From positions 1-64,000 of IMG/VR virus record IMGVR_UViG_3300042549_005931: a stretch of 64,000 nucleotides of DNA. One strand, 5' to 3'. Both the position numbers and the translations under genes were made by a program. A model generated the notes under the pieces. The model had not been told where the DNA came from. It made no database searches and was given only the letters and a program-made list of their open reading frames with translations. Of the stretch, positions 1 through 44,540 are shown piece by piece; the first letter of the stretch is position 1, and every line of letters starts with the position of its first letter.

Positions 1-67
1 ATAATCTCTGTGGCGTAACAAATCTTTGTTCCAACACAATATACACATTTTCTTTGATATTTTCCAT
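1..67 (-). CDS. 5' end of a hypothetical gene running off the window (MENIKENVYIVLEQRFVTPQRL...)
   Basis: ATG at 67 just after the NlpC/P60 stop, same strand, frame open to the window edge. Confidence 0.4.
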   Translation of the reverse strand, partial: MENIKENVYIVLEQRFVTPQRL

Positions 68-79
68 ATATGGTTAAAT

Positions 80-544
80 TTATATACTAATATAAGAATA
101 AAATTTAATTCTACCAGCTCCTTTAAAATGTTTATCGTATTTTGGTTCACTAAGATTACTAATCTTCACCCCCTCAACTCGATTGGCTGCATGAACAAAG
201 TTACCATTACCAAGATACAATCCACAGTGCCAACCACTTGGACTTATTCTACTTCTAAAGAATAGAATGTCACCAACTACTAAACTATCCCTTTGTACAC
301 GTTTAGTTTGATTCCATTGTTGTTGACAGTTATTACCAAGCTTAATACCATATACTTCACCGTATAATTTCTTTGTAAATTGTGAACAATCAATACCATT
401 TTTGGTTGAACCACCTAACCTATATCTAACTCCCATCCATTCGTTAATAAATGTTGAAAGTTCTTTTGTTTGACCAACACATGACATCGTAATTAATAAC
501 ATTACAATTATCAGAATGGTTATATCTTTAAATGTTTGTTTCAT
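80..544 (-). CDS. NlpC/P60 peptidoglycan endopeptidase, probable lipoprotein
   Basis: Hydrophobic N-terminus ending LLITMSC (lipobox-like); YRLGG..GIDCSQF catalytic Cys, GDILFF, HCGLYLGNGNFVHA. Confidence 0.9.
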   Translation of the reverse strand: MKQTFKDITILIIVMLLITMSCVGQTKELSTFINEWMGVRYRLGGSTKNGIDCSQFTKKLYGEVYGIKLGNNCQQQWNQTKRVQRDSLVVGDILFFRSRISPSGWHCGLYLGNGNFVHAANRVEGVKISNLSEPKYDKHFKGAGRIKFYSYISI

Positions 545-22073: not shown

Positions 22074-23744
22074 TTATTTATATACAATATAGTTATTTAA
22101 TACCAAAATATCAAGTTCGGTATCGTAAAACGTTTTTAATGCATCTTGTGGTGTTAATACCATTGTTTTATCTTTCACATTGAATGATGTGTTTAATAAA
22201 ATTGGGTATCCTGTTAATTTTTCAAATTCTCGGAGTATATTATAAAATAACGTTCCTCTATATACTGTTTGAACTCTGGCACTACCATCTATGTGTGTCA
22301 CTGCCGGTAATTCATCTCTATGTGATTGTCTCACTTGAACCACTTGATTCATGTAAGGTATATCATTTGTCATCATAAAATAATCGTGTTGTCTTTCCAT
22401 TGTTACCGCCGGTGCAAATGGTCTGAAAGATTCACGCTTTTTAATGACACTATTAATCCTATCCTTCATGTTAGGTAACAATGGACTTGCTAAGATGGAA
22501 CGATTACCTAACGCTCTTGAACCAAATTCACATTTACCGTTAAAACATCCAACCACTTTACCATCTTTAATTTTCTTTGCAATCCAAATCGCTAATTGTT
22601 CGTCATTAGGAAATTTAAAATGTTTAGGATTTTTACCAATAGCATCCACAATATCTTTATTAGAATATGATGGACCCAAAAATGGGTTATTAGTTATTTT
22701 CTTTTTTAATTTATTGTTCTTGACCAAGTAATGAATACATGCTCCGATTGCTGAACCAGCATCTGATGGTGCCGGTGGTATCCATAAATTTTTAAAATTT
22801 GTATTGTTAATTATTTTACCATTTGCAGTACCGTTATATGCACAACCACCAGCTAATGATAGGTCGGTATTATCAAGAAATGTGGATATATAATTGAGAA
22901 CCTCAAATAAAATTTCTTCGTATACTCGTTGTACTGATGCAGCCAAATCATTATGATATGGTTCAATACCTGTACCGGGTATTCTTGGTTCTAATTCCAA
23001 TAACTCAATAAGATTTTCATTAAACATGAGTGTGTTGGAGGTGTTCCAAGTAAACACATCCATGTTACATTTTAATTCATTATCTTCATACGTTATTAAT
23101 TTCCTAACTTTATTGATGTATGTGTTTGGATTACCGTAAGAAGCTAATCCCATCACCTTATATTCACCTTCATTTGGTCTAAACCCAAGGAATGATGTCA
23201 TTGCAGAATAGAACAATCCAAGTGAATGTGGATATTGTGCAAGACTATCATAAACCATATTCCCACCATAATCAATAAACCCAAGTGACATGGTATCTAA
23301 TTCACCAACACCATCGATTGATAATGTTGTGGATTTATTAAATGGTGATGTGTAATGTGAATAGTATATGTGCGATTCGTGATGTGTTGAATAATGTACG
23401 TTATTTGAATATAACGGTAACATCTTATTCAATTCACTAATGTTCTTTTTAATTCTTAAATACGATTTGATAGAATATATTGGATTCTTAAAAAACTGTG
23501 GTTTAATGTTATCGATAACCCTTTTTAATTTTAATTTAGGGTCTTCATAATAACAAACAGTTTCAATTTTATCACGAGTTAAATTATATTTTTTAAAAAT
23601 ATATTCAAGTGTATTAACCGGAAACGAACTATCGTGTTTGATACCCGTGAACTTTTCTTCTTCACATGCAAAAATTAATTCCCCGTTCTTGAATAAACAA
23701 GCCGATGAATCATGATAATAAGCCGAAATTCCGATTATGTACAT
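22074..23744 (-). CDS. NodU/CmcH-family carbamoyltransferase
   Basis: HDSSA..EEKF..KH, HHESH, IDGVGE, EYKVMGLASYG, AGGCAYNGTANG, EFGSRALGNRSIL, RPFAP, THIDGSARVQT, LLNTSFN. Confidence 0.95.
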   Translation of the reverse strand: MYIIGISAYYHDSSACLFKNGELIFACEEEKFTGIKHDSSFPVNTLEYIFKKYNLTRDKIETVCYYEDPKLKLKRVIDNIKPQFFKNPIYSIKSYLRIKKNISELNKMLPLYSNNVHYSTHHESHIYYSHYTSPFNKSTTLSIDGVGELDTMSLGFIDYGGNMVYDSLAQYPHSLGLFYSAMTSFLGFRPNEGEYKVMGLASYGNPNTYINKVRKLITYEDNELKCNMDVFTWNTSNTLMFNENLIELLELEPRIPGTGIEPYHNDLAASVQRVYEEILFEVLNYISTFLDNTDLSLAGGCAYNGTANGKIINNTNFKNLWIPPAPSDAGSAIGACIHYLVKNNKLKKKITNNPFLGPSYSNKDIVDAIGKNPKHFKFPNDEQLAIWIAKKIKDGKVVGCFNGKCEFGSRALGNRSILASPLLPNMKDRINSVIKKRESFRPFAPAVTMERQHDYFMMTNDIPYMNQVVQVRQSHRDELPAVTHIDGSARVQTVYRGTLFYNILREFEKLTGYPILLNTSFNVKDKTMVLTPQDALKTFYDTELDILVLNNYIVYK

Positions 23745-25444: not shown

Positions 25445-26194
25445 TTATATTATATTATTTTTTATGTGTGGTATTACTAACTCCTCACTAAATTTTTTAT
25501 GACCAAATTCTGTTGGGTGTATACCTATAAATCCAAAATTATCTGGACTATTAAATCCTCCAGTTTTACCATAATTTTCATTTACCCATTCGTGACACCC
25601 ACCAATTGGTAAAAACTTTGTTCTATCAACCATTTTAAACCAATGTTGGACTTCAGGTTCATTAATTCTATTTGTGGTTTTTGGGAAAAATATATCGGTA
25701 TATGTTGTCATAAAATACTTTACTCCCTTTTTTTCTAAATACCATTGTGTCAATAAAATATTTTGAATTGTTAATATCATTGCCGAAATGTCATTATGAA
25801 ATAAACGATAATATGTTGGTGAATTGGCAACTTCCCAATGTGGGTTAGTTATAATCCAATTTCTATATAAGTTGTCATTGTGTGGGATTACACTTGTAGG
25901 ATTTTCAACCCAACCGTCAGTGTTATTTAATTGGTTAGTGTTTTCACTGTAGAATTCATGTCTATCAACACCGCTCCACATAACCCCAACCAAAATATCG
26001 TCAGGATTTTTACCTTCATTTAATAACGTATCAACAGCATAAATTAATTTTTTTGAAATTAATCCATTACCTTGACTTGCCATACCAACATTTTTTAAAT
26101 CATAATTAATACCTTCCGCAACAAATGTTGGCCAATTCCATGGTTCAAATGTAAAACTACATCCACTGGTCACCAGTATTTTTTTATTATCCAT
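25445..26194 (-). CDS. SGNH-hydrolase-like protein
   Basis: GCSFT, GNGLI, MWSGVDR, HPTEFGH. Confidence 0.65.
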   Translation of the reverse strand: MDNKKILVTSGCSFTFEPWNWPTFVAEGINYDLKNVGMASQGNGLISKKLIYAVDTLLNEGKNPDDILVGVMWSGVDRHEFYSENTNQLNNTDGWVENPTSVIPHNDNLYRNWIITNPHWEVANSPTYYRLFHNDISAMILTIQNILLTQWYLEKKGVKYFMTTYTDIFFPKTTNRINEPEVQHWFKMVDRTKFLPIGGCHEWVNENYGKTGGFNSPDNFGFIGIHPTEFGHKKFSEELVIPHIKNNII

Positions 26195-27332
26195 AGTAAT
26201 ATACTTTTATATTTTTATTTTTATATTCTCTCCAAACATCCAATATAATACTATTTTTAGGAAAATCAATATTATAAAACTCACCCCTATGACCTAACAA
26301 ATAAATTGCCGGTTTATCTATAATGTCGAAATCGACATCTTTACCCATTTCTTTTACATAGTAACTTGTAAGTATGGTTGTGGAACCTTCAACATAATCG
26401 ACACCAGGTTTATATGATTTACCTAAAATTACTATTGGTAGATTATATGAATTTGATAAATTTACCAATTTTTTTGCAATGTTATATGCTTGCTTTTCTC
26501 GTGCTAACATTATTGAATCGAATAAATCATAACCTAAATCGTACTTATTTGCCATCCATCTTAGTGCTATATTGTCACGTGGATGACACCCTCCCCCATC
26601 TCCCATACCTGCCTTCATGTAAGATTTACTGACAATTCGTTTTGTACTTCGTTCTAATGCTTGGGTTACCACATCTGTATTAATATTACCATTTTTCTCA
26701 GCAACATCTTGAATCATATTAACAAGTGCCACCTTAGTTGAAATGAAGGTGTTATAAAAAATCTTAATAGCTTCCGCCTCATCCCACGTTCCTATTTCAA
26801 AACGAGTATCTTTGTTAACAAATGTCCTATAAAAATCAACCAATAACTTTGCATCACCGGTCTCAGTTCCATCTTCTGTTCCAATGATAATCATCTCAGG
26901 ATTTACCATATCTTCTTTTACGGTCCCCATTGCTATTAAATAGGGGTTGTATATAAATCTATAGTTTCTAACCAATTGTATTAGACTATCACTTATTGTA
27001 CCGGGTAAAACCGTTGAAATTAAAACAACTAGTTGATTGATATTTGTCCATTCATTTATTTGATATAATATTGTTTTAACTATTTCATAATCAAAATCTT
27101 TTGGTTCTAAATGCGATGTTGGATATCTACCATCGTAATCAGGATGATGTGGTGTTGGTAGAGCAATAAAAATAATATCTTTATTTTTACAAACATCTTG
27201 AATGGTGTCCACCATTTTAAAATTTATTGGGTTAACTTTATTAATATCGTAACCCTCGACATAATGATTTTCTGCCATTACTTCGGCGGCATCTTTTCCC
27301 AATTTACCAACCCCTATAAATCCAATTTTCAT
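26187..27332 (-). CDS. UDP-glucose/GDP-mannose dehydrogenase family protein
   Basis: GVGKLG, LPTP, STVLPGT, AEAIKIFYN, GGGCHPRD, GKSYKP. Confidence 0.9.
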   Translation of the reverse strand: MKIGFIGVGKLGKDAAEVMAENHYVEGYDINKVNPINFKMVDTIQDVCKNKDIIFIALPTPHHPDYDGRYPTSHLEPKDFDYEIVKTILYQINEWTNINQLVVLISTVLPGTISDSLIQLVRNYRFIYNPYLIAMGTVKEDMVNPEMIIIGTEDGTETGDAKLLVDFYRTFVNKDTRFEIGTWDEAEAIKIFYNTFISTKVALVNMIQDVAEKNGNINTDVVTQALERSTKRIVSKSYMKAGMGDGGGCHPRDNIALRWMANKYDLGYDLFDSIMLAREKQAYNIAKKLVNLSNSYNLPIVILGKSYKPGVDYVEGSTTILTSYYVKEMGKDVDFDIIDKPAIYLLGHRGEFYNIDFPKNSIILDVWREYKNKNIKVYYYG

Positions 27333-28777
27333 ATTAACTTTTTATTTTTATTATTATTGATATTTTCATCTTTAAACGAAAGAAAATATAAAACATCATC
27401 AATATCTTTATCTGAAATAAATTTAAAAAAATTGTTTGTTAAAACTTCTTCCATTTCTTGCGTAACCCTAAAACATTTATCCATATCCCATTTTGAAATT
27501 TCTTCCAAAACATCGATGATTTTTTCCATTCTTTTAATAAAATTTATCTCATCGTCATAACTTTCATCCCACCATCTATCAAAAGTCATATAACCCAATT
27601 CTTTTAATTTTTTTAATGAATGTGGATTACCACACATGATAAAAGGTTGACAAGCTAATATTGGTTTAAATGTTTTTTCTGAGAAAAAAATAGTGGTATT
27701 ATCCACCATTGATTCACTAATTATATTTAAAAAACTACGACCGTGTGCCTCTTTATTAAAAATACCAGCTTTATTATTCTCTAAGTCTTCCACATCATAA
27801 GTTGAGTGTTTTTTTGAGTCATATGTTTTATAGAATTCAAATAATTTTTCTTTTGAATGTTTATATTCATTTGGAATATTAACACTAATTATTTTAGAGT
27901 ATTCATCGGAATCCATCTCGGGTGTACCTCCCAATGTTGTTATTGATTTACCTTTTAAATTTTCATTTAAATTTAACTCGGCAAATAATAATAATCTATG
28001 TAATTTTGGTACCCTATTGAAATTTAAAAAATGAATATTTTTTTTAATAGTCTTATTATTTTGGAGCATATTATAAAATATGTTACTTAAAGAATTTTTT
28101 GTAAAAATATTTAATTTTTTACCATAATGAAACCATATATTATGTTCAAAATATGAATATGGGTATACCGTAAAATTATCTTCAATTATTCCTCTTGATA
28201 TAAGTTCATATTGTCTGTCCTTCGCCTGCATATTTGCAGTTATCATAATCACATCGTCACTATTTAATGAATATTTTTTAGATAATTTATTGAGCCAAAT
28301 AAATTCATTATCATTCATACCAAAAAATCCTTCAGTAGGTTGTATAAAAACTAATTTAGCCATTTTATTTTTAATAGATTCAATAACCATATCGTTTAAA
28401 TTCATAGTCTCATATCTTATGAATAAATCATTGTTATATAAAACCACCGGATAAATAAATTTTTGATTATTGTCATAAAAATGCTTGACGGTATTTTTTA
28501 CCATATTTTCATAAGTGTTATCTAGTATATTTTCCAAATTTTGACTGGCAAATTGAAATAATTCATGTTTTAATTGAACGTCATCGTTATTTTTTAAAAA
28601 ATATGGAAATTTAATGCCTAATTCTTCTTCAACAACAGATAGTGGTTTATGGGTAATTGTATGCCAAGGATGTATATCATAATGAGCGACATTTGAGGTA
28701 CCGTACAATGGTTTACCATTTTCATCGTACACTAATATATTATCGTAAGCCACATTAATTTTTAAATTTCTTATCAT
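27329..28777 (-). CDS. Hypothetical protein, possibly GT-B-like
   Basis: FNRVPKLHR, IISES..FFSEKTFKPI..QPF..LKELGY.TF..WWDESYD. Confidence 0.5.
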   Translation of the reverse strand: MIRNLKINVAYDNILVYDENGKPLYGTSNVAHYDIHPWHTITHKPLSVVEEELGIKFPYFLKNNDDVQLKHELFQFASQNLENILDNTYENMVKNTVKHFYDNNQKFIYPVVLYNNDLFIRYETMNLNDMVIESIKNKMAKLVFIQPTEGFFGMNDNEFIWLNKLSKKYSLNSDDVIMITANMQAKDRQYELISRGIIEDNFTVYPYSYFEHNIWFHYGKKLNIFTKNSLSNIFYNMLQNNKTIKKNIHFLNFNRVPKLHRLLLFAELNLNENLKGKSITTLGGTPEMDSDEYSKIISVNIPNEYKHSKEKLFEFYKTYDSKKHSTYDVEDLENNKAGIFNKEAHGRSFLNIISESMVDNTTIFFSEKTFKPILACQPFIMCGNPHSLKKLKELGYMTFDRWWDESYDDEINFIKRMEKIIDVLEEISKWDMDKCFRVTQEMEEVLTNNFFKFISDKDIDDVLYFLSFKDENINNNKNKKLI

Positions 28778-29505
28778 GTTCTATTTTTTTCTATGTATAT
28801 GTGATTGTTATTACCTGTAAAATCAAATATTTTAAATTTAGTTAATTCTTTAAAATCATATAATCCCAATAAACCATATCTTTCTGAATTTACATATTCG
28901 TTATATTGATTTAAATTATTCACATAATCTGTTTTTATTAATTTAATTTCAGAATCTGTTAAATTATTTTTAGATAATAACAAATATTTGAAATCGATAC
29001 AATATGTTGGTTCATTATCGAATTTATCGTTACCTAACAAAATTTGTGGATTTTCATGTTGACTAAAAATGTTATCACCCACTTCAATCTCAAATATGAA
29101 CTCATAATCAATATAATATTTTATTTTTTTATCTTTTACTGAATAATTTACAGTGAATTCATAATTTTTATTGAATTCAAAATTAAAATTTAAACCTTTT
29201 CTTGTGATGTCTTCTTTATCGTTGATATTGAAAGAACAATTAGTAAAAAATAAATTGGAATAGATTGTTTGACCGTCCGAATCTTGGTAGGTGTGTGGAT
29301 TTATACCAATTGAAAAAATAAAGGGTACTTTCCAAAATATTGCAATTGGTTCATTAGTGTAATTCTCTTTTTTATCAACAGAAAATTCAACATGTACCGT
29401 AAAATCGTTATCATTAAAAACATTTTTACAAATTTCACCTTTTTCTAAGTTATATGTTTTTAATGATGGCCACAAAATTAATGTCTGGTCTTTTTCTACC
29501 CTCAT
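28774..29505 (-). CDS. Divergent LamG/ConA-like domain protein
   Basis: Beta-rich; ends LLGLYDF..IFDFTGNNNH like the LamG inserts in the neighbouring GT7s. Confidence 0.5.
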   Translation of the reverse strand: MRVEKDQTLILWPSLKTYNLEKGEICKNVFNDNDFTVHVEFSVDKKENYTNEPIAIFWKVPFIFSIGINPHTYQDSDGQTIYSNLFFTNCSFNINDKEDITRKGLNFNFEFNKNYEFTVNYSVKDKKIKYYIDYEFIFEIEVGDNIFSQHENPQILLGNDKFDNEPTYCIDFKYLLLSKNNLTDSEIKLIKTDYVNNLNQYNEYVNSERYGLLGLYDFKELTKFKIFDFTGNNNHIYIEKNRT

Positions 29506-30884
29506 ATTTTATTTTTTATTTTATGATAAAATTCTTCCATCTCGGGAAATGTTTTTAAAAAATTAGTACCTCTTCTTAAATCATGTTCATCAACAAATTT
29601 AACAAAATCAATTCGATTTTGGTTTAAATCTTCATCTTCGGATAATGACCAATCATATATTCTTTTAATTTTTTGAACTTCAATATCATTAAATCCCATA
29701 GTATTACCGTCATAATTTTCAACTGAATTGTACACCACAAATTCTGCTTGTTTTCTTATCAATTCTTTATGTTCCGGTTCTAATATTTTAACTGTCTGAT
29801 GTGGTGGGTATCTTAAATAAGATGCATCGACCGGTGCCGTTGTTAACCAATATCTATGAAAATTTTTGTGTTGTTTTCTTAAATCCAATACATTCTTTAA
29901 AAAAGTCCTAAAAGAAAAAACACTTAATGCGTTATATGTTGTCATAAACACAATAGTCACTTTTGGTACTTTTTCTAAAATCTTATTTACATTGTCCCAA
30001 AAACTATTAAATTCTAATCCATGTCTAATATATTCGGCCTGTGCTCCCCACCCATCTAATGATGTGTATATTATCATTTCGTTTACCAAATCTTTATCGG
30101 TAATAATTTGTAATTTTTGAATTAATCTATCAATTAAATTGTTAGGTACACCTAAATTTGAATTTATGGATAAGTTTAACTTAGTATTTGGGGATGGATG
30201 TTCTATAATATAATCCAATACGTTCCAAGTATCTTTACTTAATAATGGTTCCCCACCAGTTATCCTAAATGTATGTAAATCTTTATATAAATCCGGCCAC
30301 CAATCCCAAAATGCCTCCACATATGGATTATGTTCAGAATGTTTATATGGCATTTTACCTCCGGATTTAATCCAACTTAATTCACCAAAATCGTTGGATG
30401 TTGGGTATTTTCCATATCTTTCAATCTCTTCCATCCATTTAGATGAAAACATTGGTCCGCAATATGAACATTTAAAATTACAAGTATTTGAAAAAGATAC
30501 TTCCACGTATTTTGGATTATAGTTTTCCCTCCAACTTAAATTTTTAATTTCATCAAAATATTGTTGTGACCATGGTTCTTCGGATTTAAAAACTCTATCT
30601 GATAACATATCTGAATTATCCTCAACATCCCAACAGTACTTACATTCTTTTGGTCTTTCACCATTTAACATTTGTTTTCTTGCTTCTTTTTTTTCCTTAG
30701 TGTTATGTAAGGCGGTAGGATTCCTTGATAATTCAGATAGTGGTATTTTATGTGGTGTTGGATGATGACACGAATGTGTTAATCCATTATGTAAATGCAT
30801 AGTAACTTGTGTCCATTTAGCCAAACAAAATCCACACCCAACAGAGTCTAACTTATTTTTTATTTGATTATGAACATCACTCAT
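29502..30884 (-). CDS. Radical SAM protein with an N-terminal Cys-rich (twitch/SPASM-like) region
   Basis: CNFKCSYC, ITGGEPLL, N-terminal CLAKW..SCHH..ECKYCW. Confidence 0.9.
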   Translation of the reverse strand: MSDVHNQIKNKLDSVGCGFCLAKWTQVTMHLHNGLTHSCHHPTPHKIPLSELSRNPTALHNTKEKKEARKQMLNGERPKECKYCWDVEDNSDMLSDRVFKSEEPWSQQYFDEIKNLSWRENYNPKYVEVSFSNTCNFKCSYCGPMFSSKWMEEIERYGKYPTSNDFGELSWIKSGGKMPYKHSEHNPYVEAFWDWWPDLYKDLHTFRITGGEPLLSKDTWNVLDYIIEHPSPNTKLNLSINSNLGVPNNLIDRLIQKLQIITDKDLVNEMIIYTSLDGWGAQAEYIRHGLEFNSFWDNVNKILEKVPKVTIVFMTTYNALSVFSFRTFLKNVLDLRKQHKNFHRYWLTTAPVDASYLRYPPHQTVKILEPEHKELIRKQAEFVVYNSVENYDGNTMGFNDIEVQKIKRIYDWSLSEDEDLNQNRIDFVKFVDEHDLRRGTNFLKTFPEMEEFYHKIKNKI

Positions 30885-32251
30885 AGTTCTACATTTATAA
30901 TTTTAGTGTTATTGTTGTAATATACGTCTTTTAAGTTATATTTTAAACTATTCATCCCATCATTTTTATAGTTGATTTTCCCTTGTTGCATCTCTGTAAC
31001 AAATCTTCTTTCGTTCTTTGCCGTTGTCTCACCTTTGGCCCATTTACCATTAACAAATCCTTCATCAATGTGTGGTAAACATTCAAACTTTCCTTCTCGT
31101 CTAAATGGTAGAACATCTTTCATTACTTTAATATTTTCTTTACCGGAAATTACATTATTATACACCACACCTTCAAATTTTTCTGATGAATTAAAATGTA
31201 AAATTGGTGATTCATGTATCTCATCAATTGAGGTGTCATAAATTTTAACTTCAGATATCTTACCCTTAAATCTTGTATTGGTGTGATTACAGAAACCAAG
31301 TAAGAATGGTTTAATTGAATCGTGTAACCTTAATTTAGTGGTTAATATTCTTGGCGTATTGTATTTTGCACCCATGTAATTTAAAATCAAATCATCGTTA
31401 ACATACATACTATATTCGTCAGTATCTTTCTTATATGAAACAGTAAACCATGTCCAAAGATTCTCAAATCGTTTTGACCACGTATAGTAATGGTTGTTCG
31501 ACCTATCAATAACCATTGAATTAACCGTTCTTGAATTATTAAACGATAAACCCCAAGTCCAACTACCATCTTTTCTTAATAATGGGTACTCAATAAATTT
31601 TCTTTCGGTATCTCCAACCAACCAAATGGGTACTTTATCTTGCTGTTGTTCTGCGGTGAATAAAATTGATATGGTATGGTCATTGTGTAAACAAGAACTG
31701 ATTTCTCTATTGGTTGGTATTTCAATATGTGAATCGATACCATTAAATTCATAATAATCTTTGTCCTCATATTGATTAACCACTTCACCGGTTGTGTATC
31801 CTTCGTAATAACATCTCCAAAACAAATCATCGTCCTCTTGACCCCAATCCCAATATTCATTTGAATAACCATTAGTTCTTTCTACCTGTTCTTTGGTGAA
31901 CAAAATAACACCACCAAAATACTGGTCATAGTTTATACCATAATCATATTTTGATAGTTGTGTTGCTATATGAATAGGGTTATTTTCAGGATATGAATAG
32001 TCAACATTTTCATCCGGTATCATATCAACATCATGCCAGGCAATATAGTCACATCCGTCATTGAACGCATATTGTGCGGCAATGTTTTTCATCGCACCCC
32101 TATTAAATAGTTTATCATCAACTTGATGTCCAACATAAAATTCATGGTCGATACCTTTACCGGTTAATAGTTTACCAAGTTTATCAACAAGTTCATCTAA
32201 ATGATTTTTTCTGTCTCTGTACGGTATACAAATACCTAATTTATGACTCAT
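30881..32251 (-). CDS. GT7 (beta-1,4-galactosyltransferase-like) with inserted LamG domain
   Basis: IPYRDR, FNRGAMKN, HDVD, YFGGV, NGYSNEYWDWGQEDDD, LamG insert, C-terminal DGMNSLKY. Confidence 0.88.
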   Translation of the reverse strand: MSHKLGICIPYRDRKNHLDELVDKLGKLLTGKGIDHEFYVGHQVDDKLFNRGAMKNIAAQYAFNDGCDYIAWHDVDMIPDENVDYSYPENNPIHIATQLSKYDYGINYDQYFGGVILFTKEQVERTNGYSNEYWDWGQEDDDLFWRCYYEGYTTGEVVNQYEDKDYYEFNGIDSHIEIPTNREISSCLHNDHTISILFTAEQQQDKVPIWLVGDTERKFIEYPLLRKDGSWTWGLSFNNSRTVNSMVIDRSNNHYYTWSKRFENLWTWFTVSYKKDTDEYSMYVNDDLILNYMGAKYNTPRILTTKLRLHDSIKPFLLGFCNHTNTRFKGKISEVKIYDTSIDEIHESPILHFNSSEKFEGVVYNNVISGKENIKVMKDVLPFRREGKFECLPHIDEGFVNGKWAKGETTAKNERRFVTEMQQGKINYKNDGMNSLKYNLKDVYYNNNTKIINVEL

Positions 32252-33672
32252 ATTCCTACATTAATTTCTGTTATTTTTTTATCTTTTGTTTTACCATATT
32301 CGATAAACTCTAATGTATTTAACCCATCTTCATTAGTTAAATCGGTATTAATTGATATTTCATTGTGGTATCTTAACTGATTCCATCTTGTCGATTGGTC
32401 TTTCCATTTATTATCCAAAAATCCATTTTCATTATGCTTTAAAGATTTAAAAAGTGATTTTCTTCTATATGGTATTTTCACTTCTTTATATTCTGGTAAA
32501 TTTAAATTAACAATTTCACATTTTTCTATTTGTCCATTATTTTTATTACCCGAAAGGTCAATTAATTGGTAATTTTTAATAAAATTTGCATTATAATAAA
32601 TTTTTAAATCAGATGGTGACCTATGTATATTAAAATTTTCAGTTAATAACCCGGTTCTATTAATTGATATTTCTTCAACTTCTTTTTCGGTTAATGCAAT
32701 GTCATAATAGGCAAATTCATCAATATGACCCCTAAAATAATTAGGTATTAATTCTCTATCGGGTTTACCCACACCCAAATAAAAATATGGTTCCGTTCTA
32801 TAAGACCTTAGTTTTTTAAAATGTTCTGTTTGACCTATAAAAATACCGTCTTGATATACTTTTAAGGTTTTTTCAAACATGTCTAACACAATCACTATGT
32901 TAGTTTTATAGTTTGTTTTAATATTTGAATTGACGTAAAGTGCATTGTTAAAATTATCAAACGCACAAAAATTGTATCTTGAAAATGAATTATAACAAAC
33001 GGCAAAATCCCATCCTGGAATACTAAAAACGGTAAACTCGTCAGATTCTTTTTCATGATTTAATATTAAATTTTCAGGTAAAAACGAAATGAATATCGTG
33101 GCATTTGAATTAATATTAATCGTGTTATTACATTTTATTAATGAATCTATACCGTTAAACTTTAATGCCTTAGTTTTAATATTAAAATTTTTTAATTTTA
33201 ACGTGTTTAGATTAACATCATTTTTTCTACATCTCAATAATAAATCATCATCCTCAAACCCCCACGCCCAATACTTGTTTGAGTACCCGTTAATTTTTTT
33301 AAATGTCTCAACAGGGAACATAGTCACACCACCAAAATACTCATCAAATAACTCTCTCGTCTTCCCATTCTCGTCGGGTAAGAAATCGGTTGCAAGGTGT
33401 AACGGTACTTCAGAATATGAATAATCAACATCAATAGGTAACATATCCACATCGTGAAAAACAACGTAGTCACATTCCATTTTTAGTGCGTAATTAAACC
33501 CTATGTTTAATAACATACCTCTATTGAATTGTTTTGCATTATCTTGATTGACTATAATTAATTCATACCGAATATTACGTCCATCTAAATAATCGGTGAT
33601 ATGTTTTTTAAATAAATCTAAATGCTCAAATCTATCTCTATAAGGGACAATTACACCTAATTTTTTATCCAT
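32248..33672 (-). CDS. GT7 (beta-1,4-galactosyltransferase-like) with inserted LamG domain
   Basis: VPYRDR, FNRGMLLNIG, FHDVD, YFGGV, NGYSNKYWAWGFEDDD, ALKFNG..FRGHIDEFAYYDIAL, C-terminal DGLNTL. Confidence 0.9.
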   Translation of the reverse strand: MDKKLGVIVPYRDRFEHLDLFKKHITDYLDGRNIRYELIIVNQDNAKQFNRGMLLNIGFNYALKMECDYVVFHDVDMLPIDVDYSYSEVPLHLATDFLPDENGKTRELFDEYFGGVTMFPVETFKKINGYSNKYWAWGFEDDDLLLRCRKNDVNLNTLKLKNFNIKTKALKFNGIDSLIKCNNTININSNATIFISFLPENLILNHEKESDEFTVFSIPGWDFAVCYNSFSRYNFCAFDNFNNALYVNSNIKTNYKTNIVIVLDMFEKTLKVYQDGIFIGQTEHFKKLRSYRTEPYFYLGVGKPDRELIPNYFRGHIDEFAYYDIALTEKEVEEISINRTGLLTENFNIHRSPSDLKIYYNANFIKNYQLIDLSGNKNNGQIEKCEIVNLNLPEYKEVKIPYRRKSLFKSLKHNENGFLDNKWKDQSTRWNQLRYHNEISINTDLTNEDGLNTLEFIEYGKTKDKKITEINVGI

Positions 33673-33862
33673 TTATTGTTGGGTCTTTTGGTTTGGTGGT
33701 CTTGTGCCACTCCGATAAGTAATATTGGATTCTTTCACTCCATTCATTCTTATCAACTTCTTCAAACCAAACGGTTAACGCATCTAGTGAATTTGCTATC
33801 TTCTCTAATGCCTTTACTTTTCTTTGTTCAATTAATAATTGTTCTTTTTCTAATTCCGTCAT
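33665..33862 (-). CDS. Small hypothetical protein
   Basis: Coupled to neighbours; helical composition. Confidence 0.6.
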   Translation of the reverse strand: MTELEKEQLLIEQRKVKALEKIANSLDALTVWFEEVDKNEWSERIQYYLSEWHKTTKPKDPTING

Positions 33863-34710
33863 ATCGATATAATTTTTTTACTTAGTAATCCCCATTTTTT
33901 AAAGTTATTGTAATCTGGTGTGGTTAAATCCATTTCAAACATAAAGTCAGGTCTTTTTAAATCAATTTTAAAATTACTTTTTCTCAATACATTAAACATT
34001 AATTCATACTCATTTGAAAATGCGTATTCTTCTTTAATATTTGCCACGTCTTGTATTCTTTGAATTGCGGTATCATCCCATTTAAAATGATGTACTTGGA
34101 CATATCCGTGTGGATAAATTAATGGGTGATTCCATCCTTGCCATTTCCAAGTTGTGTGACCATCATTATCAACATAGTGTTGACCAGATGTCAATTGTAT
34201 AAAACCTTTTTTAATACAAATTTTATTTGGGTTAGCTCCACTCATGGGATGTCTGAAGAATCCGGCATTTGGAAACTGTTCCCAAATTGATATTTTAGAT
34301 TTTAAATTTGTAAACTCTCCGTTAGTACCAATTCTATCAATAAATCCACCTCTAACAATTGCATAATTATTTTCTTCACAATAATTGATAATTTTATTTA
34401 TGTCGTTGTCAGGATATAAATGGAACTCATCAATATCTGCAATGACCCACCAATCATTTGGTTCTTTGTTTGTTATGTAGTTATATAACATTGTAACTTT
34501 GTTCCAATCAAAAACTCTATCTTGATGAACCCTTACAATCTTTACATTATTATAATGTTGAGTCACACCCATAACATCCTTATTTAAGGAAGAGTACATT
34601 TCAGATTCATAAACTACGATGTTTATCTCATCAACATAGTTTTGATAATGATTAATGAAATGTGGTAATAATTTGACTCCGTGTCCGATAACCGTTAATA
34701 ATCTTGTCAT
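33859..34710 (-). CDS. GT2-related glycosyltransferase
   Basis: LLPHFINHY, WWVIADIDEF, GGFIDR, HHFKW. Confidence 0.75.
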   Translation of the reverse strand: MTRLLTVIGHGVKLLPHFINHYQNYVDEINIVVYESEMYSSLNKDVMGVTQHYNNVKIVRVHQDRVFDWNKVTMLYNYITNKEPNDWWVIADIDEFHLYPDNDINKIINYCEENNYAIVRGGFIDRIGTNGEFTNLKSKISIWEQFPNAGFFRHPMSGANPNKICIKKGFIQLTSGQHYVDNDGHTTWKWQGWNHPLIYPHGYVQVHHFKWDDTAIQRIQDVANIKEEYAFSNEYELMFNVLRKSNFKIDLKRPDFMFEMDLTTPDYNNFKKWGLLSKKIISI

Positions 34711-35432
34711 TTTCTATTAATAATGGTAATACCACTTGAGGATGGTTTATCCATTAATATACGAAAATTGAATAGATTAATCAAGTTCCATTCAGGATTA
34801 TCTTGTAATTCTTTGACTAACTTGGATGGTCCATCAAACCGGTGGTGGTCTTTTTTTGCATCTTCTGAAACTATAAATGTTTCTTCATATTCTCCATCAG
34901 TATCGTGTAACATAATGATACCTTTTTCGGATAAGATTGTTGAATATAATTCGAAATCTTTTTTTACTCCTTCATATGAATGGTCTCCATCGATAAATAA
35001 AAAATCTATTTTAATATCTTGTCTAATAAAAAAATCATAAAACGCGTCGACAGAAGTCGATTTGATAAAACGAGGAACAAATACCTTACGAAGGAATGAG
35101 TGTTCGTTTTCCAAGTCGTTATACCCACCAACCCCATTACAAGCGTCAACGACATAAGTAGTCCCAATGTCGCCCCAATTAAAATCATTGTTTCCATTGA
35201 ATATATTTTGTTTATGTAAATCTACTCTGGCCTGTGTTATTATTCTTGGTATATAACCACCACCAGAACCAATACAAACACAATTCTTGGCCCTCATGTG
35301 TTGAATTGTTGAATAAACCATGATACCATCACCCATATGTTCACTAGTTGCTCCGTGGGACCATAAGTATGGAACCATTTCTCCACCATTTGATGTGATG
35401 TTATTTGTTATAAAATCTTGATTGGTAATCAT
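34707..35432 (-). CDS. SAM-dependent methyltransferase (Methyltransf_24-like)
   Basis: IGSGGG, FIDGDHSYEGVKKDF, IMLHD. Confidence 0.85.
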   Translation of the reverse strand: MITNQDFITNNITSNGGEMVPYLWSHGATSEHMGDGIMVYSTIQHMRAKNCVCIGSGGGYIPRIITQARVDLHKQNIFNGNNDFNWGDIGTTYVVDACNGVGGYNDLENEHSFLRKVFVPRFIKSTSVDAFYDFFIRQDIKIDFLFIDGDHSYEGVKKDFELYSTILSEKGIIMLHDTDGEYEETFIVSEDAKKDHHRFDGPSKLVKELQDNPEWNLINLFNFRILMDKPSSSGITIINRK

Positions 35433-36197: not shown

Positions 36198-36653
36198 TTA
36201 GACTTTTTTAACAAGTTCATTATCCATAATAGTCTCAATTGTTTCATAAACTGTTCTGTTTGTGGTGTCTATATCAATAAAATTATCTGTTGGTTCTTGA
36301 TAATTTTCAACATGAAATTGTTCTCTACCCCTAATATCTGAGGTGTGAACAAATATTTCAACTACATTTTCTTTTAATTCTTTTTTAAAATTATCCCTCA
36401 AATCTTTAAACGGTGACACTATTGACATGACAACATTTTTACCATCATTAAACGAAAGTTTTGCCATGTTTTGTGCAAGTTCAATATTTGTTCTTCTCCC
36501 ATTTTCAGAATAATCTTTGTTTTGTGTTAAATTACGCAAGTCGTCACCGTCAATGTGATGTACGTTTGTCAATTTATGTTCACACAGATATTTTGCTAAT
36601 GTTGTTTTACCGGCACCAGGTTGTCCAATAAAATAAAAAATCTTCTTACTCAT
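36198..36653 (-). CDS. cysC: Adenylyl-sulfate (APS) kinase, compact form
   Basis: GQPGAGKTT P-loop, IDGDDLR, YSENGRRTNI, SPFKDLR, YQEP. Confidence 0.85.
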   Translation of the reverse strand: MSKKIFYFIGQPGAGKTTLAKYLCEHKLTNVHHIDGDDLRNLTQNKDYSENGRRTNIELAQNMAKLSFNDGKNVVMSIVSPFKDLRDNFKKELKENVVEIFVHTSDIRGREQFHVENYQEPTDNFIDIDTTNRTVYETIETIMDNELVKKV

Positions 36654-40950: not shown

Positions 40951-41535
40951 CTATCTAAATGTAGAACCGCCAACCCACAAGACTAAACTTTTACGAACGC
41001 CTTGGGTCACCGGTGTTATTCTATGTAACATATAACTTGGAAATAAAATTGCACATCCTTTATGTTTTTCTACGTTTTGGATACCTGCACCTGTCCACAA
41101 TTCTAACTCACCACCTTCATAATCCTCGGGATTCGATAGCTGAATGGTTATACTTACTTTTCTATGGTTAATAGGATGTGGACCAATGTCCATATGCCAT
41201 CCATAATGTCCACCATCATCATAATATTCGGTATATTGTATTGAGTCAACTATTGAATGTAAATCAAATTTCCAAACATTATTTGCTTCCAAAATAAACG
41301 ATTGTATTTTATCATATACCCAATGTGATTTATCATCAATATGAATCCATTTAACTTTTGATTTACGAACATTTTTTACTTCATCACCTCCTACAACGGT
41401 AGCTTCTTCATATGGATATAATTCTTTAAGATTATCTATCCATTCCAATTCTTGCTCAGAAAATCCTTCTTTAAAGCAATAGTAATTTGATTGGTCAATC
41501 GTTGAGTCTGTATTGAAAATTGGTTTAATTTGCAT
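40951..41535 (-). CDS. 2OG-Fe(II) oxygenase (PKHD/prolyl-hydroxylase-like)
   Basis: WHMD, RKVSITIQLS..YEGGEL, FPSYMLHRITPVT.G.RKSLVLW. Confidence 0.9.
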   Translation of the reverse strand: MQIKPIFNTDSTIDQSNYYCFKEGFSEQELEWIDNLKELYPYEEATVVGGDEVKNVRKSKVKWIHIDDKSHWVYDKIQSFILEANNVWKFDLHSIVDSIQYTEYYDDGGHYGWHMDIGPHPINHRKVSITIQLSNPEDYEGGELELWTGAGIQNVEKHKGCAILFPSYMLHRITPVTQGVRKSLVLWVGGSTFR

Positions 41536-42172
41536 GATTTATTAATTTTTTTACCACATCTTGAAACGTATCGGATTCTAATTGCATCACATGTTCATAA
41601 TCTTTACTTGTAACACTCAATTCACCAACTGCCTTAAAATTAGTTATGTTATATATTTTTCTTTTATGATAATCTTTATTCCACCAATATAATAAGTCAT
41701 CACCAAAAAATACTTTTAATCCTTTGTCGATAACAATGTAGTTTGATTTTTTGATTATCATCATACAACCAAAACCTAAACTTCTACACGGTGCTTCTTC
41801 AAAAATATAATCATCATTATCGTTATTGTGTTCTTCATAAAAGTTTGCATTTGCATCAAACCCAATAACACCAAAATCTAAATCATTGATTCTTGATAAG
41901 TTGTGATGTAAATTTTTAAAATTAAAACTTATATCATCATTCAATATACATAAAATTTCGTTAGTTGCATACTCAAAACCTAAATTCCACGCAGGATTTA
42001 CAAAAATGTTCTCATCTTGTTTGAATACTTTTATTTGTGGGTCATTAAATGATGAATCTGTGTTATCGATAACAATAAATTCTGAATTTGGAATGTTGGC
42101 TTCTTTAAATAATTCGATATTGTCCAATATCTTATCCGATTTCCACAAAGTTGGGGTTATAAATGTTATCAT
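41525..42172 (-). CDS. GT2-like glycosyltransferase
   Basis: VIDN, VNPAWNLG, ILNDD, FGC, FFGDD. Confidence 0.75.
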   Translation of the reverse strand: MITFITPTLWKSDKILDNIELFKEANIPNSEFIVIDNTDSSFNDPQIKVFKQDENIFVNPAWNLGFEYATNEILCILNDDISFNFKNLHHNLSRINDLDFGVIGFDANANFYEEHNNDNDDYIFEEAPCRSLGFGCMMIIKKSNYIVIDKGLKVFFGDDLLYWWNKDYHKRKIYNITNFKAVGELSVTSKDYEHVMQLESDTFQDVVKKLINHAN

Positions 42173-42229
42173 ATTATCTAATATATAAATTTTATTAATA
42201 ATAAGGTATATTATAACTTAATTATTGTG

Positions 42230-42736
42230 TTAAAAAAATGATTGAAGGGTGATACGTAAATTAGCGTCTAAATTAACTGTGGATACTGAATGGTGTACAC
42301 CACCTGTTTGAATTACACCTAAGTTTCTTTCGGGTTTAATGGCTCTAATTTCATTATTTAACTTATACATAAAATAACCACCCCAATCTGGGTCCCAATA
42401 ATCATTTAAGTATATAGTCAATGCAGATTCTACATGTGAATCATCGTGCCATGGTATATAACTTAATTTAGTCCAAATATATAACATTAATTGTTCAACA
42501 TTTAGTCCTGTTTTAGCATCTATTTCAGCCTTTAATTTGTTATGTAAAGGACTATTCTCATCTATGTCTATTATTAAAACCGGTGTAGTTTGGTTTCTTA
42601 TTTCATCTGGCCAACAGAAATTAGTTCTTCCCAAATATGGATTAGGACTTTTTATAGTTTTTTCCGCAAATGTTTGTACTTCATCAAACAAATCGTTTGA
42701 TAGGAATTCATCATATACTATTATGTTCTTATTCAT
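42230..42736 (-). CDS. 2OG-Fe(II) oxygenase
   Basis: WHDD, TIYLN..WGG, HSVS, RITLQ. Confidence 0.88.
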   Translation of the reverse strand: MNKNIIVYDEFLSNDLFDEVQTFAEKTIKSPNPYLGRTNFCWPDEIRNQTTPVLIIDIDENSPLHNKLKAEIDAKTGLNVEQLMLYIWTKLSYIPWHDDSHVESALTIYLNDYWDPDWGGYFMYKLNNEIRAIKPERNLGVIQTGGVHHSVSTVNLDANLRITLQSFF

Positions 42737-42739
42737 AAT

Positions 42740-43381: not shown

Positions 43382-43386
43382 TTTAT

Positions 43387-43950: not shown

Positions 43951-43951
43951 A

Positions 43952-44539: not shown

Positions 44540-44540
44540 A

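What the first reader, a model, noticed from the sequence alone, without database searches (positions are those of the whole stretch)
28774..33672. Two tandem GT7 enzymes with a LamG lectin domain inserted inside the catalytic domain
Both ORFs have the animal-type beta-1,4-galactosyltransferase motifs (PYRDR, FNRG, DVD, FGGV, WxWGxEDDD). About 200-250 aa of LamG/ConA sequence then intervenes before the GT7 C-terminal segment (DGxNxL) resumes. This is a domain insertion rather than an end-to-end fusion, and it falls just after the acceptor-binding EDDD motif. A free divergent LamG gene lies nearby (28774..29505). The insert may select the acceptor or dock the enzyme on LamG-rich virion structures (inference).
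Basis: partly seen in the sequence, partly recalled or inferred. Interest (0 to 1): 0.6.

Follow-up and report, generated by a model that had tools for sequence, protein, structure and literature searches.

The report
Phage glycosyltransferases with a nested lectin-like domain
Two neighbouring genes of an uncultured giant T4-like phage encode animal-type (GT7) sugar-transferring enzymes whose catalytic fold is split by a whole lectin-like domain; the same domain also occurs free and, in relatives, fused to the adjacent radical SAM enzyme, so it probably guides several enzymes to one target.

Summary
About 230-245 residues of Laminin_G_3/pentraxin-like beta-sandwich sit between the xED helix and the strand bearing the C-terminal metal-binding His.

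- **Fold:** an AlphaFold2 model (pLDDT 88, pTM 0.85) superposes on Drosophila beta4GalT7 across residues 1..474 (Z 25.2, 206 residues). The insert matches LamG/pentraxin domains (Z 14-21).
- **Polarity:** bacterial and giant-virus GT7 relatives lack the insert.
- **Free gene:** the 243-aa ORF is a true homologue of the insert (hhalign 98.7%, E 3e-16).
a twitch radical SAM gene lies between B and the free gene. The order MTase, GT2-like, A, B, rSAM is kept in nearly all of 80 related IMG/VR loci (at least 549 contigs have a relative). In some relatives the module is fused once or twice to the rSAM.

The architecture is frequent in metagenomic phages (Uroviricota), machine-annotated only, and absent from cultured phages. 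I read the module as a shared acceptor-docking domain for a glycan-tailoring cassette. The target is unknown; a virion fibre is slightly favoured over host envelope glycan. New variant of a known kind, moderate interest.

The parts
32248..33672 (-). ORF A, 474 aa: GT7 glycosyltransferase with a nested LamG-like domain
   Evidence: ORF. Pfam GT7N + GT7C + Laminin_G_3. AF2 model pLDDT 88.4, pTM 0.85. beta4GalT7 Z 25.2 over model range 1..474. 1946 homologues of the same length and Pfam trio.
33208..33672 (-). A residues ~1-155: N-terminal part of the GT-A/GT7 core. It holds PYRDR, FNRG, DVD (D74, D76), YFGGV and WGFEDDD (E140, D141) on the xED helix (H140-150).
   Evidence: invariant columns; Foldseek to beta4GalT7: 157 columns, 36% identity, E 1.5e-14.
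32473..33207 (-). A residues ~156-400: the inserted module. The LamG/pentraxin-like beta-sandwich spans ~165-397, with a two-strand stalk at 156-161 and 395-400.
   Evidence: Laminin_G_3 E 4.4e-8. PAPP-A LG domain Z 21.0, BACOVA_03559 Z 19.9, pentraxins Z 17-18, laminin LG5 Z 14.5. Boundaries come from comparison with uninserted bacterial GT7.
32251..32472 (-). A residues ~401-474: C-terminal part of the GT7 core. It holds PYRRKSLFKSLKH with invariant P401 and H413 (candidate C-His metal ligand), a lower-confidence loop at 411-430, DGLNTL (invariant D449, G450) and the final strands.
   Evidence: Invariant columns. Collinear match to the beta4GalT1 C-terminus. Motif correspondence with the uninserted bacterial sequence 'YRKQCRYRSLEH...DGLSNL'. 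Model range 1..474 aligned to beta4GalT7. pLDDT blocks.
30881..32251 (-). ORF B, 456 aa: paralogue of A (31% identity over the full length) with the same nested architecture. N part ~1-152 (31796-32251), insert ~153-381 (31109-31795), C part ~382-456 with H394 and DGMNSL (30884-31108). Its start overlaps the stop of A by 4 nt.
   Evidence: (1619 homologues).
29502..30884 (-). Twitch-domain radical SAM enzyme, 460 aa, translationally coupled to B and to the free module.
   Evidence: NF033640 N_Twi_rSAM, 360.7 bits against a cut-off of 170. Directly downstream of B in nearly all of 80 related loci. Fused to the LamG-like module or to B in relatives. Fused to an uninserted GT7 in a bacterial MAG.
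28774..29505 (-). Free LamG/pentraxin-like module (F243, 243 aa), homologous to the inserts of A and B.
   Evidence: hhalign of the F family against the insert family: prob 98.7%, E 3.4e-16, 184 columns. AF2 pLDDT 81.1. PAPP-A LG Z 16.3, BACOVA_03559 Z 15.5, pentraxins Z 13-14. A small-ORF profile finds it in 66 of 81 loci.
33859..34710 (-). GT2_4-like putative glycosyltransferase (283 aa), a conserved upstream member of the cassette.
   Evidence: PF13704 E 7e-6, just under the gathering score. Conserved position.
34707..35432 (-). Methyltransf_24 SAM-dependent methyltransferase (241 aa), a conserved upstream member of the cassette.
   Evidence: PF13578 E 1.3e-11. Conserved position.

Best explanation
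A and B are soluble, cytoplasmic, metal-dependent GT-A glycosyltransferases of the GT7 family. They have no signal peptide or membrane segment.

**What is shown.**
- The catalytic fold is discontinuous. A complete LamG/pentraxin-like beta-sandwich of about 230-245 residues is nested in the tight turn between the xED helix (WGxEDDD) and the beta-strand that carries the C-terminal His.
- The last ~75 residues return to complete the GT7 core.
- Both paralogues keep the DVD, xED, C-His and DGxNxL residues.

**What is inferred.**
- Both enzymes are catalytically active and add two different sugars or linkages in succession.
- The nested module is not a private feature of the transferases. The same module is encoded free next door and, in related phages, is fused once or twice to the N-terminus of the adjacent twitch radical SAM enzyme. 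I therefore read it as a shared acceptor-recognition (docking) domain that brings GT7-A, GT7-B and the radical SAM enzyme onto one macromolecular substrate. The logic is like the lectin domain of polypeptide GalNAc-transferases.
- The six-gene cassette (methyltransferase, GT2-like, A, B, radical SAM, free module) builds and tailors a glycan during infection by a clade of ~290-335 kb T4-like phages.
- The acceptor is unknown. I slightly favour a phage virion surface or fibre protein over host envelope glycan.
For: **Architecture**
- Pfam GT7N + GT7C (cut at profile position 67 of 78) + Laminin_G_3.
- Two collinear stretches against beta4GalT1.
- AF2 pLDDT 88.4, pTM 0.85.
- beta4GalT7 Z 25.2, rmsd 2.2, 206 residues over model range 1..474; insert Z 14-21 to LamG, pentraxin and PAPP-A LG domains.
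- ESM Atlas models of relatives reproduce the whole chain (TM 0.92 over 469 residues).

**Insertion polarity**
- Uninserted bacterial GT7 of 218-305 aa, for example in the isolate Rhodoplanes tepidamans (266 aa), have 58-70 residues between EDD and DGxNxL, and 'YRKQCRYRSLEH' follows the xED helix directly.
- Giant-virus GT7 relatives are also uninserted.

**Catalytic residues**
- D74, D76, E140, D141, H413, D449 and G450 are invariant across both paralogue families.

**Shared module**
- F family against insert family: prob 98.7%, E 3.4e-16.
- Same fold neighbours as the insert.
- Module-rSAM fusions, one copy (697-702 aa) or two copies (931-940 aa), in at least 13 loci.

**Functional coupling of GT7 and rSAM**
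- The order A, B, rSAM holds in nearly all of 80 loci.
- A B-rSAM fusion in L030.
- A bacterial GT7-rSAM fusion of 877 aa in L102.

**Phage clade**
- gp23-type major capsid gene in G000 and in 4 of 4 near-complete relatives.
- All Atlas clusters are Uroviricota.

**Target (circumstantial only)**
- None of 49 ORFs in the surrounding glycan island has a membrane-like segment, so no Wzx, Wzy or initiating transferase is encoded there.
- The island abuts a collagen-like tail fibre, two LamG_3 genes and other fibre genes.
- In the two relatives that have collagen genes, those genes lie next to the cassette.
Against: - No activity, donor, acceptor or ligand has been measured.
- The C-terminal segment is not significant by sequence alone (E 0.62; the single sequence finds nothing). 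Its assignment rests on collinearity, motif correspondence and a predicted model.
- I had no access to model coordinates. I could not check where the module sits relative to the active site, or whether H413 reaches the DVD site.
- The polar residues conserved in the insert (E212, N228, D239) have not been mapped to a pocket.
- A shared module could equally mediate enzyme-enzyme assembly.
- Collagen-like genes are missing from 2 of 4 near-complete relatives that carry the cassette, so collagen cannot be the general acceptor.
- Peripheral GT-A enzymes can act on lipid-linked host glycans without any membrane segment of their own.
Confidence: 0.6

Rival explanations
1. The LamG-like modules are assembly elements, not substrate binders. 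The inserts of A and B, the free module and the rSAM-fused copies associate with each other, as pentraxins oligomerise. They would hold the cassette enzymes together as a multi-enzyme complex.
For: The same module is attached to three different enzymes and is also made free. The closest folds include oligomeric pentraxins. A and B are always co-encoded.
Against: There is no positive evidence of binding. The one A-B complex job gave no verdict, which counts neither way. Modules of this superfamily are most often ligand or glycan binders (established knowledge of the ConA-like lectin superfamily). The two roles do not exclude each other.
Confidence: 0.2
2. The cassette remodels a host envelope polysaccharide (O-antigen or capsule) during infection, for example to block superinfection. 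It would not decorate the virion. The LamG module would then bind the growing lipid-linked glycan.
For: Iyer et al. 2021 (PMC7824862) interpret glycosyltransferase clusters of jumbo cyanophages as modifiers of host outer polysaccharide. The window holds nucleotide-sugar genes: a DegT aminotransferase, a UDP-sugar dehydrogenase-like gene, an APS kinase and a carbamoyltransferase.
Against: None of 49 island ORFs has a membrane-like segment, so no flippase, polymerase or initiating transferase is encoded there. The host's own could still be used. The island lies beside the fibre module.
Confidence: 0.35
3. Simple end-to-end fusion: a GT7 catalytic domain followed by a LamG domain and an unrelated C-terminal tail. 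This is what the Pfam domain string alone suggests.
For: The Pfam order is GT7N, GT7C, Laminin_G_3, with no Pfam model on the last ~75-130 residues. The tail is not significant by sequence alone.
Against: - GT7C is cut at profile position 67 of 78.
- The tail aligns collinearly to the beta4GalT1 C-terminus.
- The tail carries the invariant His and the DGxNxL motif that uninserted bacterial GT7 proteins have right after the xED helix.
- 206 residues superpose on beta4GalT7 over model range 1..474.
Confidence: 0.03
4. One or both paralogues are catalytically dead, because the insert disrupts the enzyme, and survive as lectin-like or structural proteins.
For: The insertion lies next to the region that in beta4GalT1 forms the mobile loop and metal site (established knowledge of beta4GalT1). 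No activity data exist.
Against: The DVD, xED, C-His and DG residues are invariant in both families at down to 29-32% identity. The proteins keep a constant length in thousands of sequences. That pattern is typical of purifying selection on an active site.
Confidence: 0.07

Closest known systems
Animal beta-1,4-galactosyltransferases, GT7 (beta4GalT7, PDB 3lw6/4lw3; beta4GalT1, PDB 6fwu/1fr8)
   Same: - Same GT-A fold: Z 25.2; Foldseek E 1.5e-14.
- 30-36% identity over the N-terminal ~157 residues.
- Both Pfam halves.
- DVD, YFGGV, WGxEDDD, C-terminal His and DGxNSL motifs in the same order.
- A lower-confidence loop follows the His, at the place where beta4GalT1 has its long mobile loop (plus established knowledge).
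   Different: - The animal enzymes are type II Golgi membrane proteins with an uninterrupted catalytic domain; about 18 residues link the two stretches.
- The phage proteins are soluble and lack the first ~45 profile positions of GT7N.
- The phage proteins carry ~240 extra residues at that link.
- Donor and acceptor of the phage enzymes are unknown.
Uninserted bacterial and giant-virus GT7-like enzymes (for example Rhodoplanes tepidamans DSM 9987, 266 aa, L120; Mimivirus LCMiAC01 galactosyltransferase A0A481YZG5, 315 aa; Megaviridae A0A5J6VLB6, 258 aa)
   Same: GT7N + GT7C and the same motifs. They are 35-56% identical to A over residues 1-150. They are soluble and lack the animal stem region.
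   Different: No LamG module: 58-70 residues separate EDD from DGxNxL, against 309 in A. One bacterial member (L102) is fused to a radical SAM domain instead.
Polypeptide GalNAc-transferases (GT27): a GT-A catalytic domain plus a lectin domain
   Same: The working principle I propose is the same: a GT-A enzyme of the same GT-A clade as GT7 (clade 5 in Taujale et al. 2020, PMC7185993) carries a carbohydrate-binding-type domain that steers it to its acceptor.
   Different: In GT27 the lectin is a ricin-type beta-trefoil appended to the C-terminus, and the enzymes are retaining (established knowledge). Here the module is a LamG/pentraxin-type sandwich nested inside the catalytic fold of an inverting-type family. 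This is not a member of GT27.
Hypervariable regions of GT-A enzymes (Taujale et al. 2020, eLife, PMC7185993)
   Same: The general rule is the same: the GT-A core tolerates expansions that build acceptor specificity, while DxD, xED and C-His stay fixed.
   Different: The described hypervariable regions are loops: HV1 (beta3 to alphaC), HV2 (beta6 to beta7) and HV3 (the tail after beta8). Here a whole autonomous domain sits between the xED helix and the strand with the C-His. As far as I can map it from sequence, that site is none of the three.
PAPP-A LG domain, pentraxins, BACOVA_03559, and laminin/neurexin LG domains (ConA-like lectin superfamily, Pfam Laminin_G_3)
   Same: Same beta-sandwich fold for both the insert and the free ORF: Z 21.0/16.3, 19.9/15.5, 17-18/13-14 and 14.5/10.8. 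All 35 inserts match Laminin_G_3.
   Different: - Sequence identity is only 7-17%.
- The free ORF has no Pfam hit.
- Whether there is a Ca2+ or sugar site is unknown.
- The module has extra C-terminal strands beyond the Pfam model's end (A 340-397).

Membership tests
GT7 (Pfam Glyco_transf_7N + Glyco_transf_7C; beta4GalT-like GT-A enzymes) | Both Pfam halves above their gathering scores | tested here: met
   A: 75.8 bits against 27, and 67.4 against 23. B: 58.6 against 27, and 68.1 against 23.
GT7 (Pfam Glyco_transf_7N + Glyco_transf_7C; beta4GalT-like GT-A enzymes) | GT-A fold superposable on solved GT7 structures, including the C-terminal segment | tested here: met
   On a predicted model: 3lw6_A Z 25.2, rmsd 2.2, 206 of 241 residues, model range 1..474, chain range 73..298. 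Foldseek E 1.5e-14.
GT7 (Pfam Glyco_transf_7N + Glyco_transf_7C; beta4GalT-like GT-A enzymes) | DxD metal/donor motif and xED catalytic-base motif | tested here: met
   HDVDM and WGxEDDD are present in A and B. D74, D76, E140 and D141 are invariant in 35 sequences from both paralogue families.
GT7 (Pfam Glyco_transf_7N + Glyco_transf_7C; beta4GalT-like GT-A enzymes) | C-terminal His (metal ligand) and the DG(L/M)N(S/T)L segment after the xED helix | tested here: met
   H413 and D449-G450 are invariant. They correspond to '...SLEH...DGLSNL' of uninserted bacterial GT7. There is a collinear but weak match to the beta4GalT1 C-terminus. That H413 binds metal is inference.
GT7 (Pfam Glyco_transf_7N + Glyco_transf_7C; beta4GalT-like GT-A enzymes) | Inverting beta-1,4 transfer of Gal or GalNAc from a UDP-sugar | not testable with these tools
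   There is no assay. Y112 aligns with the Tyr before FGGV of beta4GalT1. I recall that this residue influences Gal versus GalNAc choice. That is a lead only.
Laminin_G_3 / ConA-like lectin-glucanase superfamily | Pfam PF13385 match | tested here: met
   A: 32-33.8 bits against a cut-off of 27.6. B falls below the cut-off: 22.9-25.3 bits. 35 of 35 family inserts match at E <= 0.01, best 3.9e-10. The free ORF has no Pfam hit, but it matches the insert family by hhalign at 98.7%.
Laminin_G_3 / ConA-like lectin-glucanase superfamily | Two-sheet jelly-roll beta-sandwich fold | tested here: met
   Insert residues 165-399: Z 21.0 (PAPP-A LG), 19.9 (4dqa), 17-18 (pentraxins), 14.5 (laminin LG5). Free ORF: Z 16.3, 15.5 and 13-14. 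Both are predicted models.
Laminin_G_3 / ConA-like lectin-glucanase superfamily | Binding of a carbohydrate or protein ligand | not testable with these tools
   No coordinates or assay were available.
Polypeptide GalNAc-transferase (GT27) type 'catalytic + lectin' enzymes | C-terminal ricin-type (beta-trefoil) lectin appended to a GT27 catalytic domain | tested here: not met
   The module is LamG/pentraxin-like and nested, and the catalytic domain is GT7. The resemblance is one of working principle only.
NF033640 N_Twi_rSAM (neighbouring gene 29502-30884) | NCBIfam subfamily model above its cut-off | tested here: met
   360.7 bits against 170, covering model positions 4-398 of 398.

The most novel reading that the evidence does not exclude
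A LamG/pentraxin-like module acts as a portable address label for a whole phage glycan-tailoring pathway. Nested in two GT7 transferases, fused to a radical SAM enzyme, and made free, it would direct all of them to one virion surface protein (for example a fibre). These uncultured ~300 kb T4-like phages would then decorate their own particles with a complex, radical-SAM-modified glycan. That would be a phage-encoded protein glycosylation system whose targeting logic resembles that of mucin-type O-glycosylation.
Probability: 0.25. Interest if true: 0.7.

Novelty: new variant of a known kind. Interest (0 to 1): 0.5.

Why it matters
**For glycosyltransferase structure.** GT-A enzymes are thought to gain acceptor specificity by growing loops at a few variable sites around a fixed core. 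Here a complete, autonomous lectin-type domain is nested between the catalytic-base helix and the metal-binding His of an animal-type GT7 enzyme. All catalytic residues are kept. The arrangement is stable across thousands of sequences and an ancient duplication. It is a natural example of domain-insertion engineering in a glycosyltransferase.

**For annotation.** Pfam domain strings hide the arrangement, because they read as a plain fusion.

**For phage biology.** The same module recurs free and on the neighbouring radical SAM enzyme. This points to a shared targeting device for a conserved six-gene cassette in an abundant but uncultured clade of jumbo T4-like phages. Finding the acceptor would show whether these phages glycosylate their own virions or remodel the host surface.

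**For enzymology.** The GT7-radical SAM link, including natural fusions in a phage and in a bacterium, gives a handle on an uncharacterised radical SAM subfamily.

Tried and rejected
1. **Cultured phages.** tblastn of A against 50,697 cultured or deposited phage records found no match at E 1e-3. blastn of the region found only a 12% patch, under the radical SAM gene, in Ralstonia phage RsoM2USA. No cultured reference is available.
2. **C-terminal segment as a single sequence against PDB.** Nothing relevant. As a family profile, the top hit is beta4GalT1, but at E 0.62. The sequence evidence for the tail is supportive only.
3. **Word search with A residues 1-160, to find uninserted relatives.** It returned almost only truncated copies of the same family on short contigs. 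These end inside the insert. Uninserted relatives came from the genome scan instead.
4. **A-B heterodimer (complex prediction).** No verdict: score 0.00, controls not run. This is evidence neither for nor against binding.
5. **Circular permutation.**
   - The C-terminal strands of the insert and of the free ORF ('Y.LIDLSGNKNNG', 'FKIFDFTGNNN') look like the N-terminal 'W.DLSGNGNTGTL' strand of the two canonical LamG_3 genes in the window.
   - The doubled-sequence test with both family HMMs gave no alignment across the junction.
   - Pfam does not match the isolated tail. The idea is not supported and remains open.
6. **Collagen-specific acceptor.** The window has a 744-residue GXY fibre and seven 2OG-Fe(II) oxygenase paralogues. 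Two of four near-complete relatives with the cassette have no Pfam collagen match. I rejected collagen as the general acceptor.
7. **Literature.** No paper in the library holds both Pfam names, and none of the listed hits describes this architecture.
8. **Not done.** I did not run the large representative search, because the word search and family scans left nothing open. I did not use reads tools.

Full report
**Setting.** The window is the first 64 kb of a 269-kb IMG/VR virus record with ~30% GC, estimated 81% complete by CheckV.
- The record has a T4 gp23-type major capsid gene. The nearest cultured match at DNA level is Flavobacterium phage vB_FspM_immuto.
- Four near-complete relatives that carry the same cassette are 289-336 kb, and all have a gp23 capsid gene.
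- So this is an uncultured clade of jumbo T4-like myophages. The host is unknown. Contigs with the cassette have been binned into Pelagibacterales, Flavobacteriaceae/Flavobacteriales and Anaeromicropila MAGs. Such bins are unreliable.

**Observation.** Four minus-strand ORFs with overlapping starts and stops fill the stated span:

| ORF | Coordinates | Length |
|---|---|---|
| A | 32248-33672 | 474 aa |
| B | 30881-32251 | 456 aa |
| Radical SAM | 29502-30884 | 460 aa |
| F243 | 28774-29505 | 243 aa |

It is a full-length member of NCBIfam NF033640, the twitch-domain radical SAM subfamily (360.7 bits against 170).
- Pfam finds Glyco_transf_7N and Glyco_transf_7C well above threshold in both proteins. 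Laminin_G_3 is above threshold in A and just below it in B.
- A and B are 31% identical over their full length, including the insert and the tail.

**Is it an insertion?** Five lines agree.
1. Glyco_transf_7C stops at profile position 67 of 78 in both proteins.
2. A profile of 35 family members matches beta4GalT1 in two collinear stretches. Profile positions 3-154 align to chain 51-202, and 425-474 align to chain 221-269, which ends at the chain's C-terminus. About 270 profile positions therefore replace about 18 residues. The tail profile alone ranks the beta4GalT1 C-terminus first among 177,635 PDB sequences, but only at E 0.62.
3. The AlphaFold2 model of A is confident (mean pLDDT 88.4, pTM 0.85).
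   - Against one representative of every PDB cluster, the best match is Drosophila beta4GalT7: Z 25.2, rmsd 2.2 Å, 206 aligned residues, model range 1..474, chain range 73..298.
   - The part before the insert has only ~155 residues, so at least 50 aligned residues must come from the tail.
   - Residues 165-399 match the PAPP-A LG domain (Z 21.0), BACOVA_03559 (19.9), pentraxins (17-18) and laminin/neurexin LG domains (about 14).
4. ESM Atlas models of relatives reproduce the whole chain (TM 0.92 over 469 residues).
5. Uninserted relatives exist.
   - Bacterial GT7-like proteins of 218-305 aa, including one from the isolate Rhodoplanes tepidamans DSM 9987, have both Pfam halves and 58-70 residues between EDD and DGxNxL. 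A has 309.
   - In the bacterial proteins the xED helix is followed at once by '...IYRKQCRYRSLEH...DGLSNL...'. This corresponds to 'IPYRRKSLFKSLKH...DGLNTL' at A residues 400-454.
   - Giant-virus GT7 proteins are uninserted too.

The polarity is therefore insertion into a GT7 core. The site is the turn between the xED helix (alphaF in the nomenclature of Taujale et al. 2020, PMC7185993) and the strand that carries the C-terminal His. As far as sequence mapping allows, it is not one of the three hypervariable regions defined in that paper.

**Are the enzymes intact?** D74, D76 (DVD), E140, D141 (xED), H413 and D449-G450 are invariant across both paralogue families at down to 29% identity. The stretch after H413 (residues 411-430) has the lowest confidence in the tail. 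It lies where beta4GalT1 has its mobile long loop (my knowledge of that enzyme). I infer that both proteins are active, metal-dependent, inverting transferases. The donor and acceptor cannot be read from sequence.

**The free gene and the spread of the module.** The window's F243 has no Pfam hit.
- A profile built only from small ORFs downstream of the radical SAM gene in related loci (59 distinct sequences, 66 of 81 loci) hits the inserts of A-type proteins at E 1e-16 to 1e-23, over nearly its whole length.
- F family against insert family by hhalign gives 98.7% probability, E 3.4e-16, 184 columns.
- The AF2 model of F243 (pLDDT 81) has the same top structural neighbours as the insert.
- The same module is fused to the N-terminus of the radical SAM enzyme, once (697-702 aa) or twice (931-940 aa), in at least 13 related loci. 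It also occurs as a two-module protein.
- One phage locus has a B-radical SAM fusion (914 aa). A Desulfomonilaceae MAG, on a 3.3-Mb contig, has an uninserted GT7 fused to a radical SAM domain (877 aa).

**Conservation.**
- The word search finds 1946 (A) and 1619 (B) proteins of the same length and Pfam content. All are metagenomic and unnamed.
- At least 549 IMG/VR contigs encode a relative.
- In nearly all of the 80 best loci the order is methyltransferase, GT2_4-like, A, B, radical SAM wherever the contig reaches far enough. Exceptions are L075-L077, where the GT2_4-like gene lies after B, and L080, which lacks a B match.
- About 30 Atlas clusters with this architecture are all Uroviricota.
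- UniProt-based viral models and deposited phage genomes contain no example.
- The papers I could search do not describe it.

**Mechanism.** Shown: the nested architecture, the intact motifs, the homology of the free and fused modules, and the conserved cassette. Inferred: the module is a shared acceptor-docking domain for GT7-A, GT7-B and the radical SAM enzyme, analogous in logic to the lectin domain of polypeptide GalNAc-transferases. The main rival for the module's role is enzyme-enzyme assembly. The one complex prediction gave no verdict.

**Target.** Two readings stand.
- *Virion or fibre glycosylation.* It is weakly favoured for two reasons.
  - None of 49 ORFs in the 45-kb glycan island has a membrane-like segment.
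  - The island abuts the fibre module: a collagen-like fibre, two canonical LamG_3 genes, and 1369-aa and 723-aa fibre proteins.
- *Host envelope glycan remodelling.* This is the view of Iyer et al. 2021 for jumbo cyanophage GT clusters.

A collagen-specific acceptor is unlikely, since two of four complete relatives lack collagen genes.

**Verdict.** The functional idea remains inference, but the module's recurrence on a second enzyme class strengthens it. This is a new variant of a known kind: a GT7 GT-A enzyme with a nested LamG domain. It is common in uncultured phages and visible to Pfam only as a misleading linear domain string. Interest is moderate (0.5).

Noticed in passing
window 40951-45681 (-): A run of about seven tandem small ORFs (168-215 aa). 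The four that I scanned are 2OG-Fe(II) oxygenase (PF13640, prolyl-hydroxylase-type) paralogues, interrupted by a small GT2 gene at 41525-42172. Their substrate is unknown.
   Followed up: partly
window 50838-53966 (-): A 1042-aa tail-fibre protein with 744 residues of uninterrupted collagen-like GXY repeats (X mostly Asn/Pro, Y mostly Gln/Thr; GPQ, GNQ, GNT, GPT). It explains the local GC peak of 47%. Thr-rich GXT repeats recall glycosylated bacterial collagen-like proteins. That comparison is from memory and was not tested.
   Followed up: partly
window 54992-55687 and 55689-56417 (-): Two adjacent free ORFs (231 and 242 aa) are strong, canonical Laminin_G_3 proteins (E 3.5e-22 and 3.4e-17). 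They lie between the collagen-like fibre and a 1369-aa protein with no family match. They are only remotely similar to the GT7 insert (about 10 bits).
   Followed up: partly
window 8682-9068 (+): A 128-aa ORF inside the glycan island matches only positions 148-214 of the T4 Gp23 major capsid profile (E 5.5e-16). The real 575-aa capsid gene lies 165 kb away. A similar 98-aa fragment occurs in a relative (G001).
   Followed up: no
related loci L016, L017, L032, L034, L035, L078 (one copy); L024, L025, L037, L052-L054, L065 (two copies); L044 13197-14555: The LamG-like module of the free ORF is fused to the N-terminus of the radical SAM enzyme, giving proteins of 697-702 aa (one copy) or 931-940 aa (two copies). 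In L044 it forms a 452-aa two-module protein.
   Followed up: yes
L030 4175-6919; L102 5989-8622: Two natural fusions of GT7 with radical SAM. The first is a 914-aa B-rSAM protein on a phage contig. It could be an assembly read-through. The second is an 877-aa uninserted GT7 + Radical_SAM protein on a 3.3-Mb Desulfomonilaceae contig.
   Followed up: partly
window 5835-50445: A ~45-kb island of sugar and tailoring genes:
- at least five GT2 and two other glycosyltransferases;
- a DegT aminotransferase (10412-11593);
- a PhyH dioxygenase and a KAS III (14546-16356);
- a carbamoyltransferase (22074-23744);
- a UDP-sugar dehydrogenase-like gene (26187-27332);
- an APS kinase (36198-36653);
- two tryptophan-halogenase-like genes (45688-47310, 48910-50445).

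None of its 49 ORFs has a membrane-like segment.
   Followed up: partly
A residues 355-392, F243 residues 212-240, compared with window 54992-56417: The last strands of the insert and of the free ORF carry a 'DLSGNKNNG' / 'DFTGNNN' motif. It resembles the first strands ('DLSGNGNTGTL') of canonical LamG_3 proteins, which hints at circular permutation. A doubled-sequence HMM test did not support this.
   Followed up: yes
window 27329-28777 (-): A 482-aa ORF just downstream of the free module has no family match. It recurs downstream of the cassette in many related loci at 23-54% identity.
   Followed up: no
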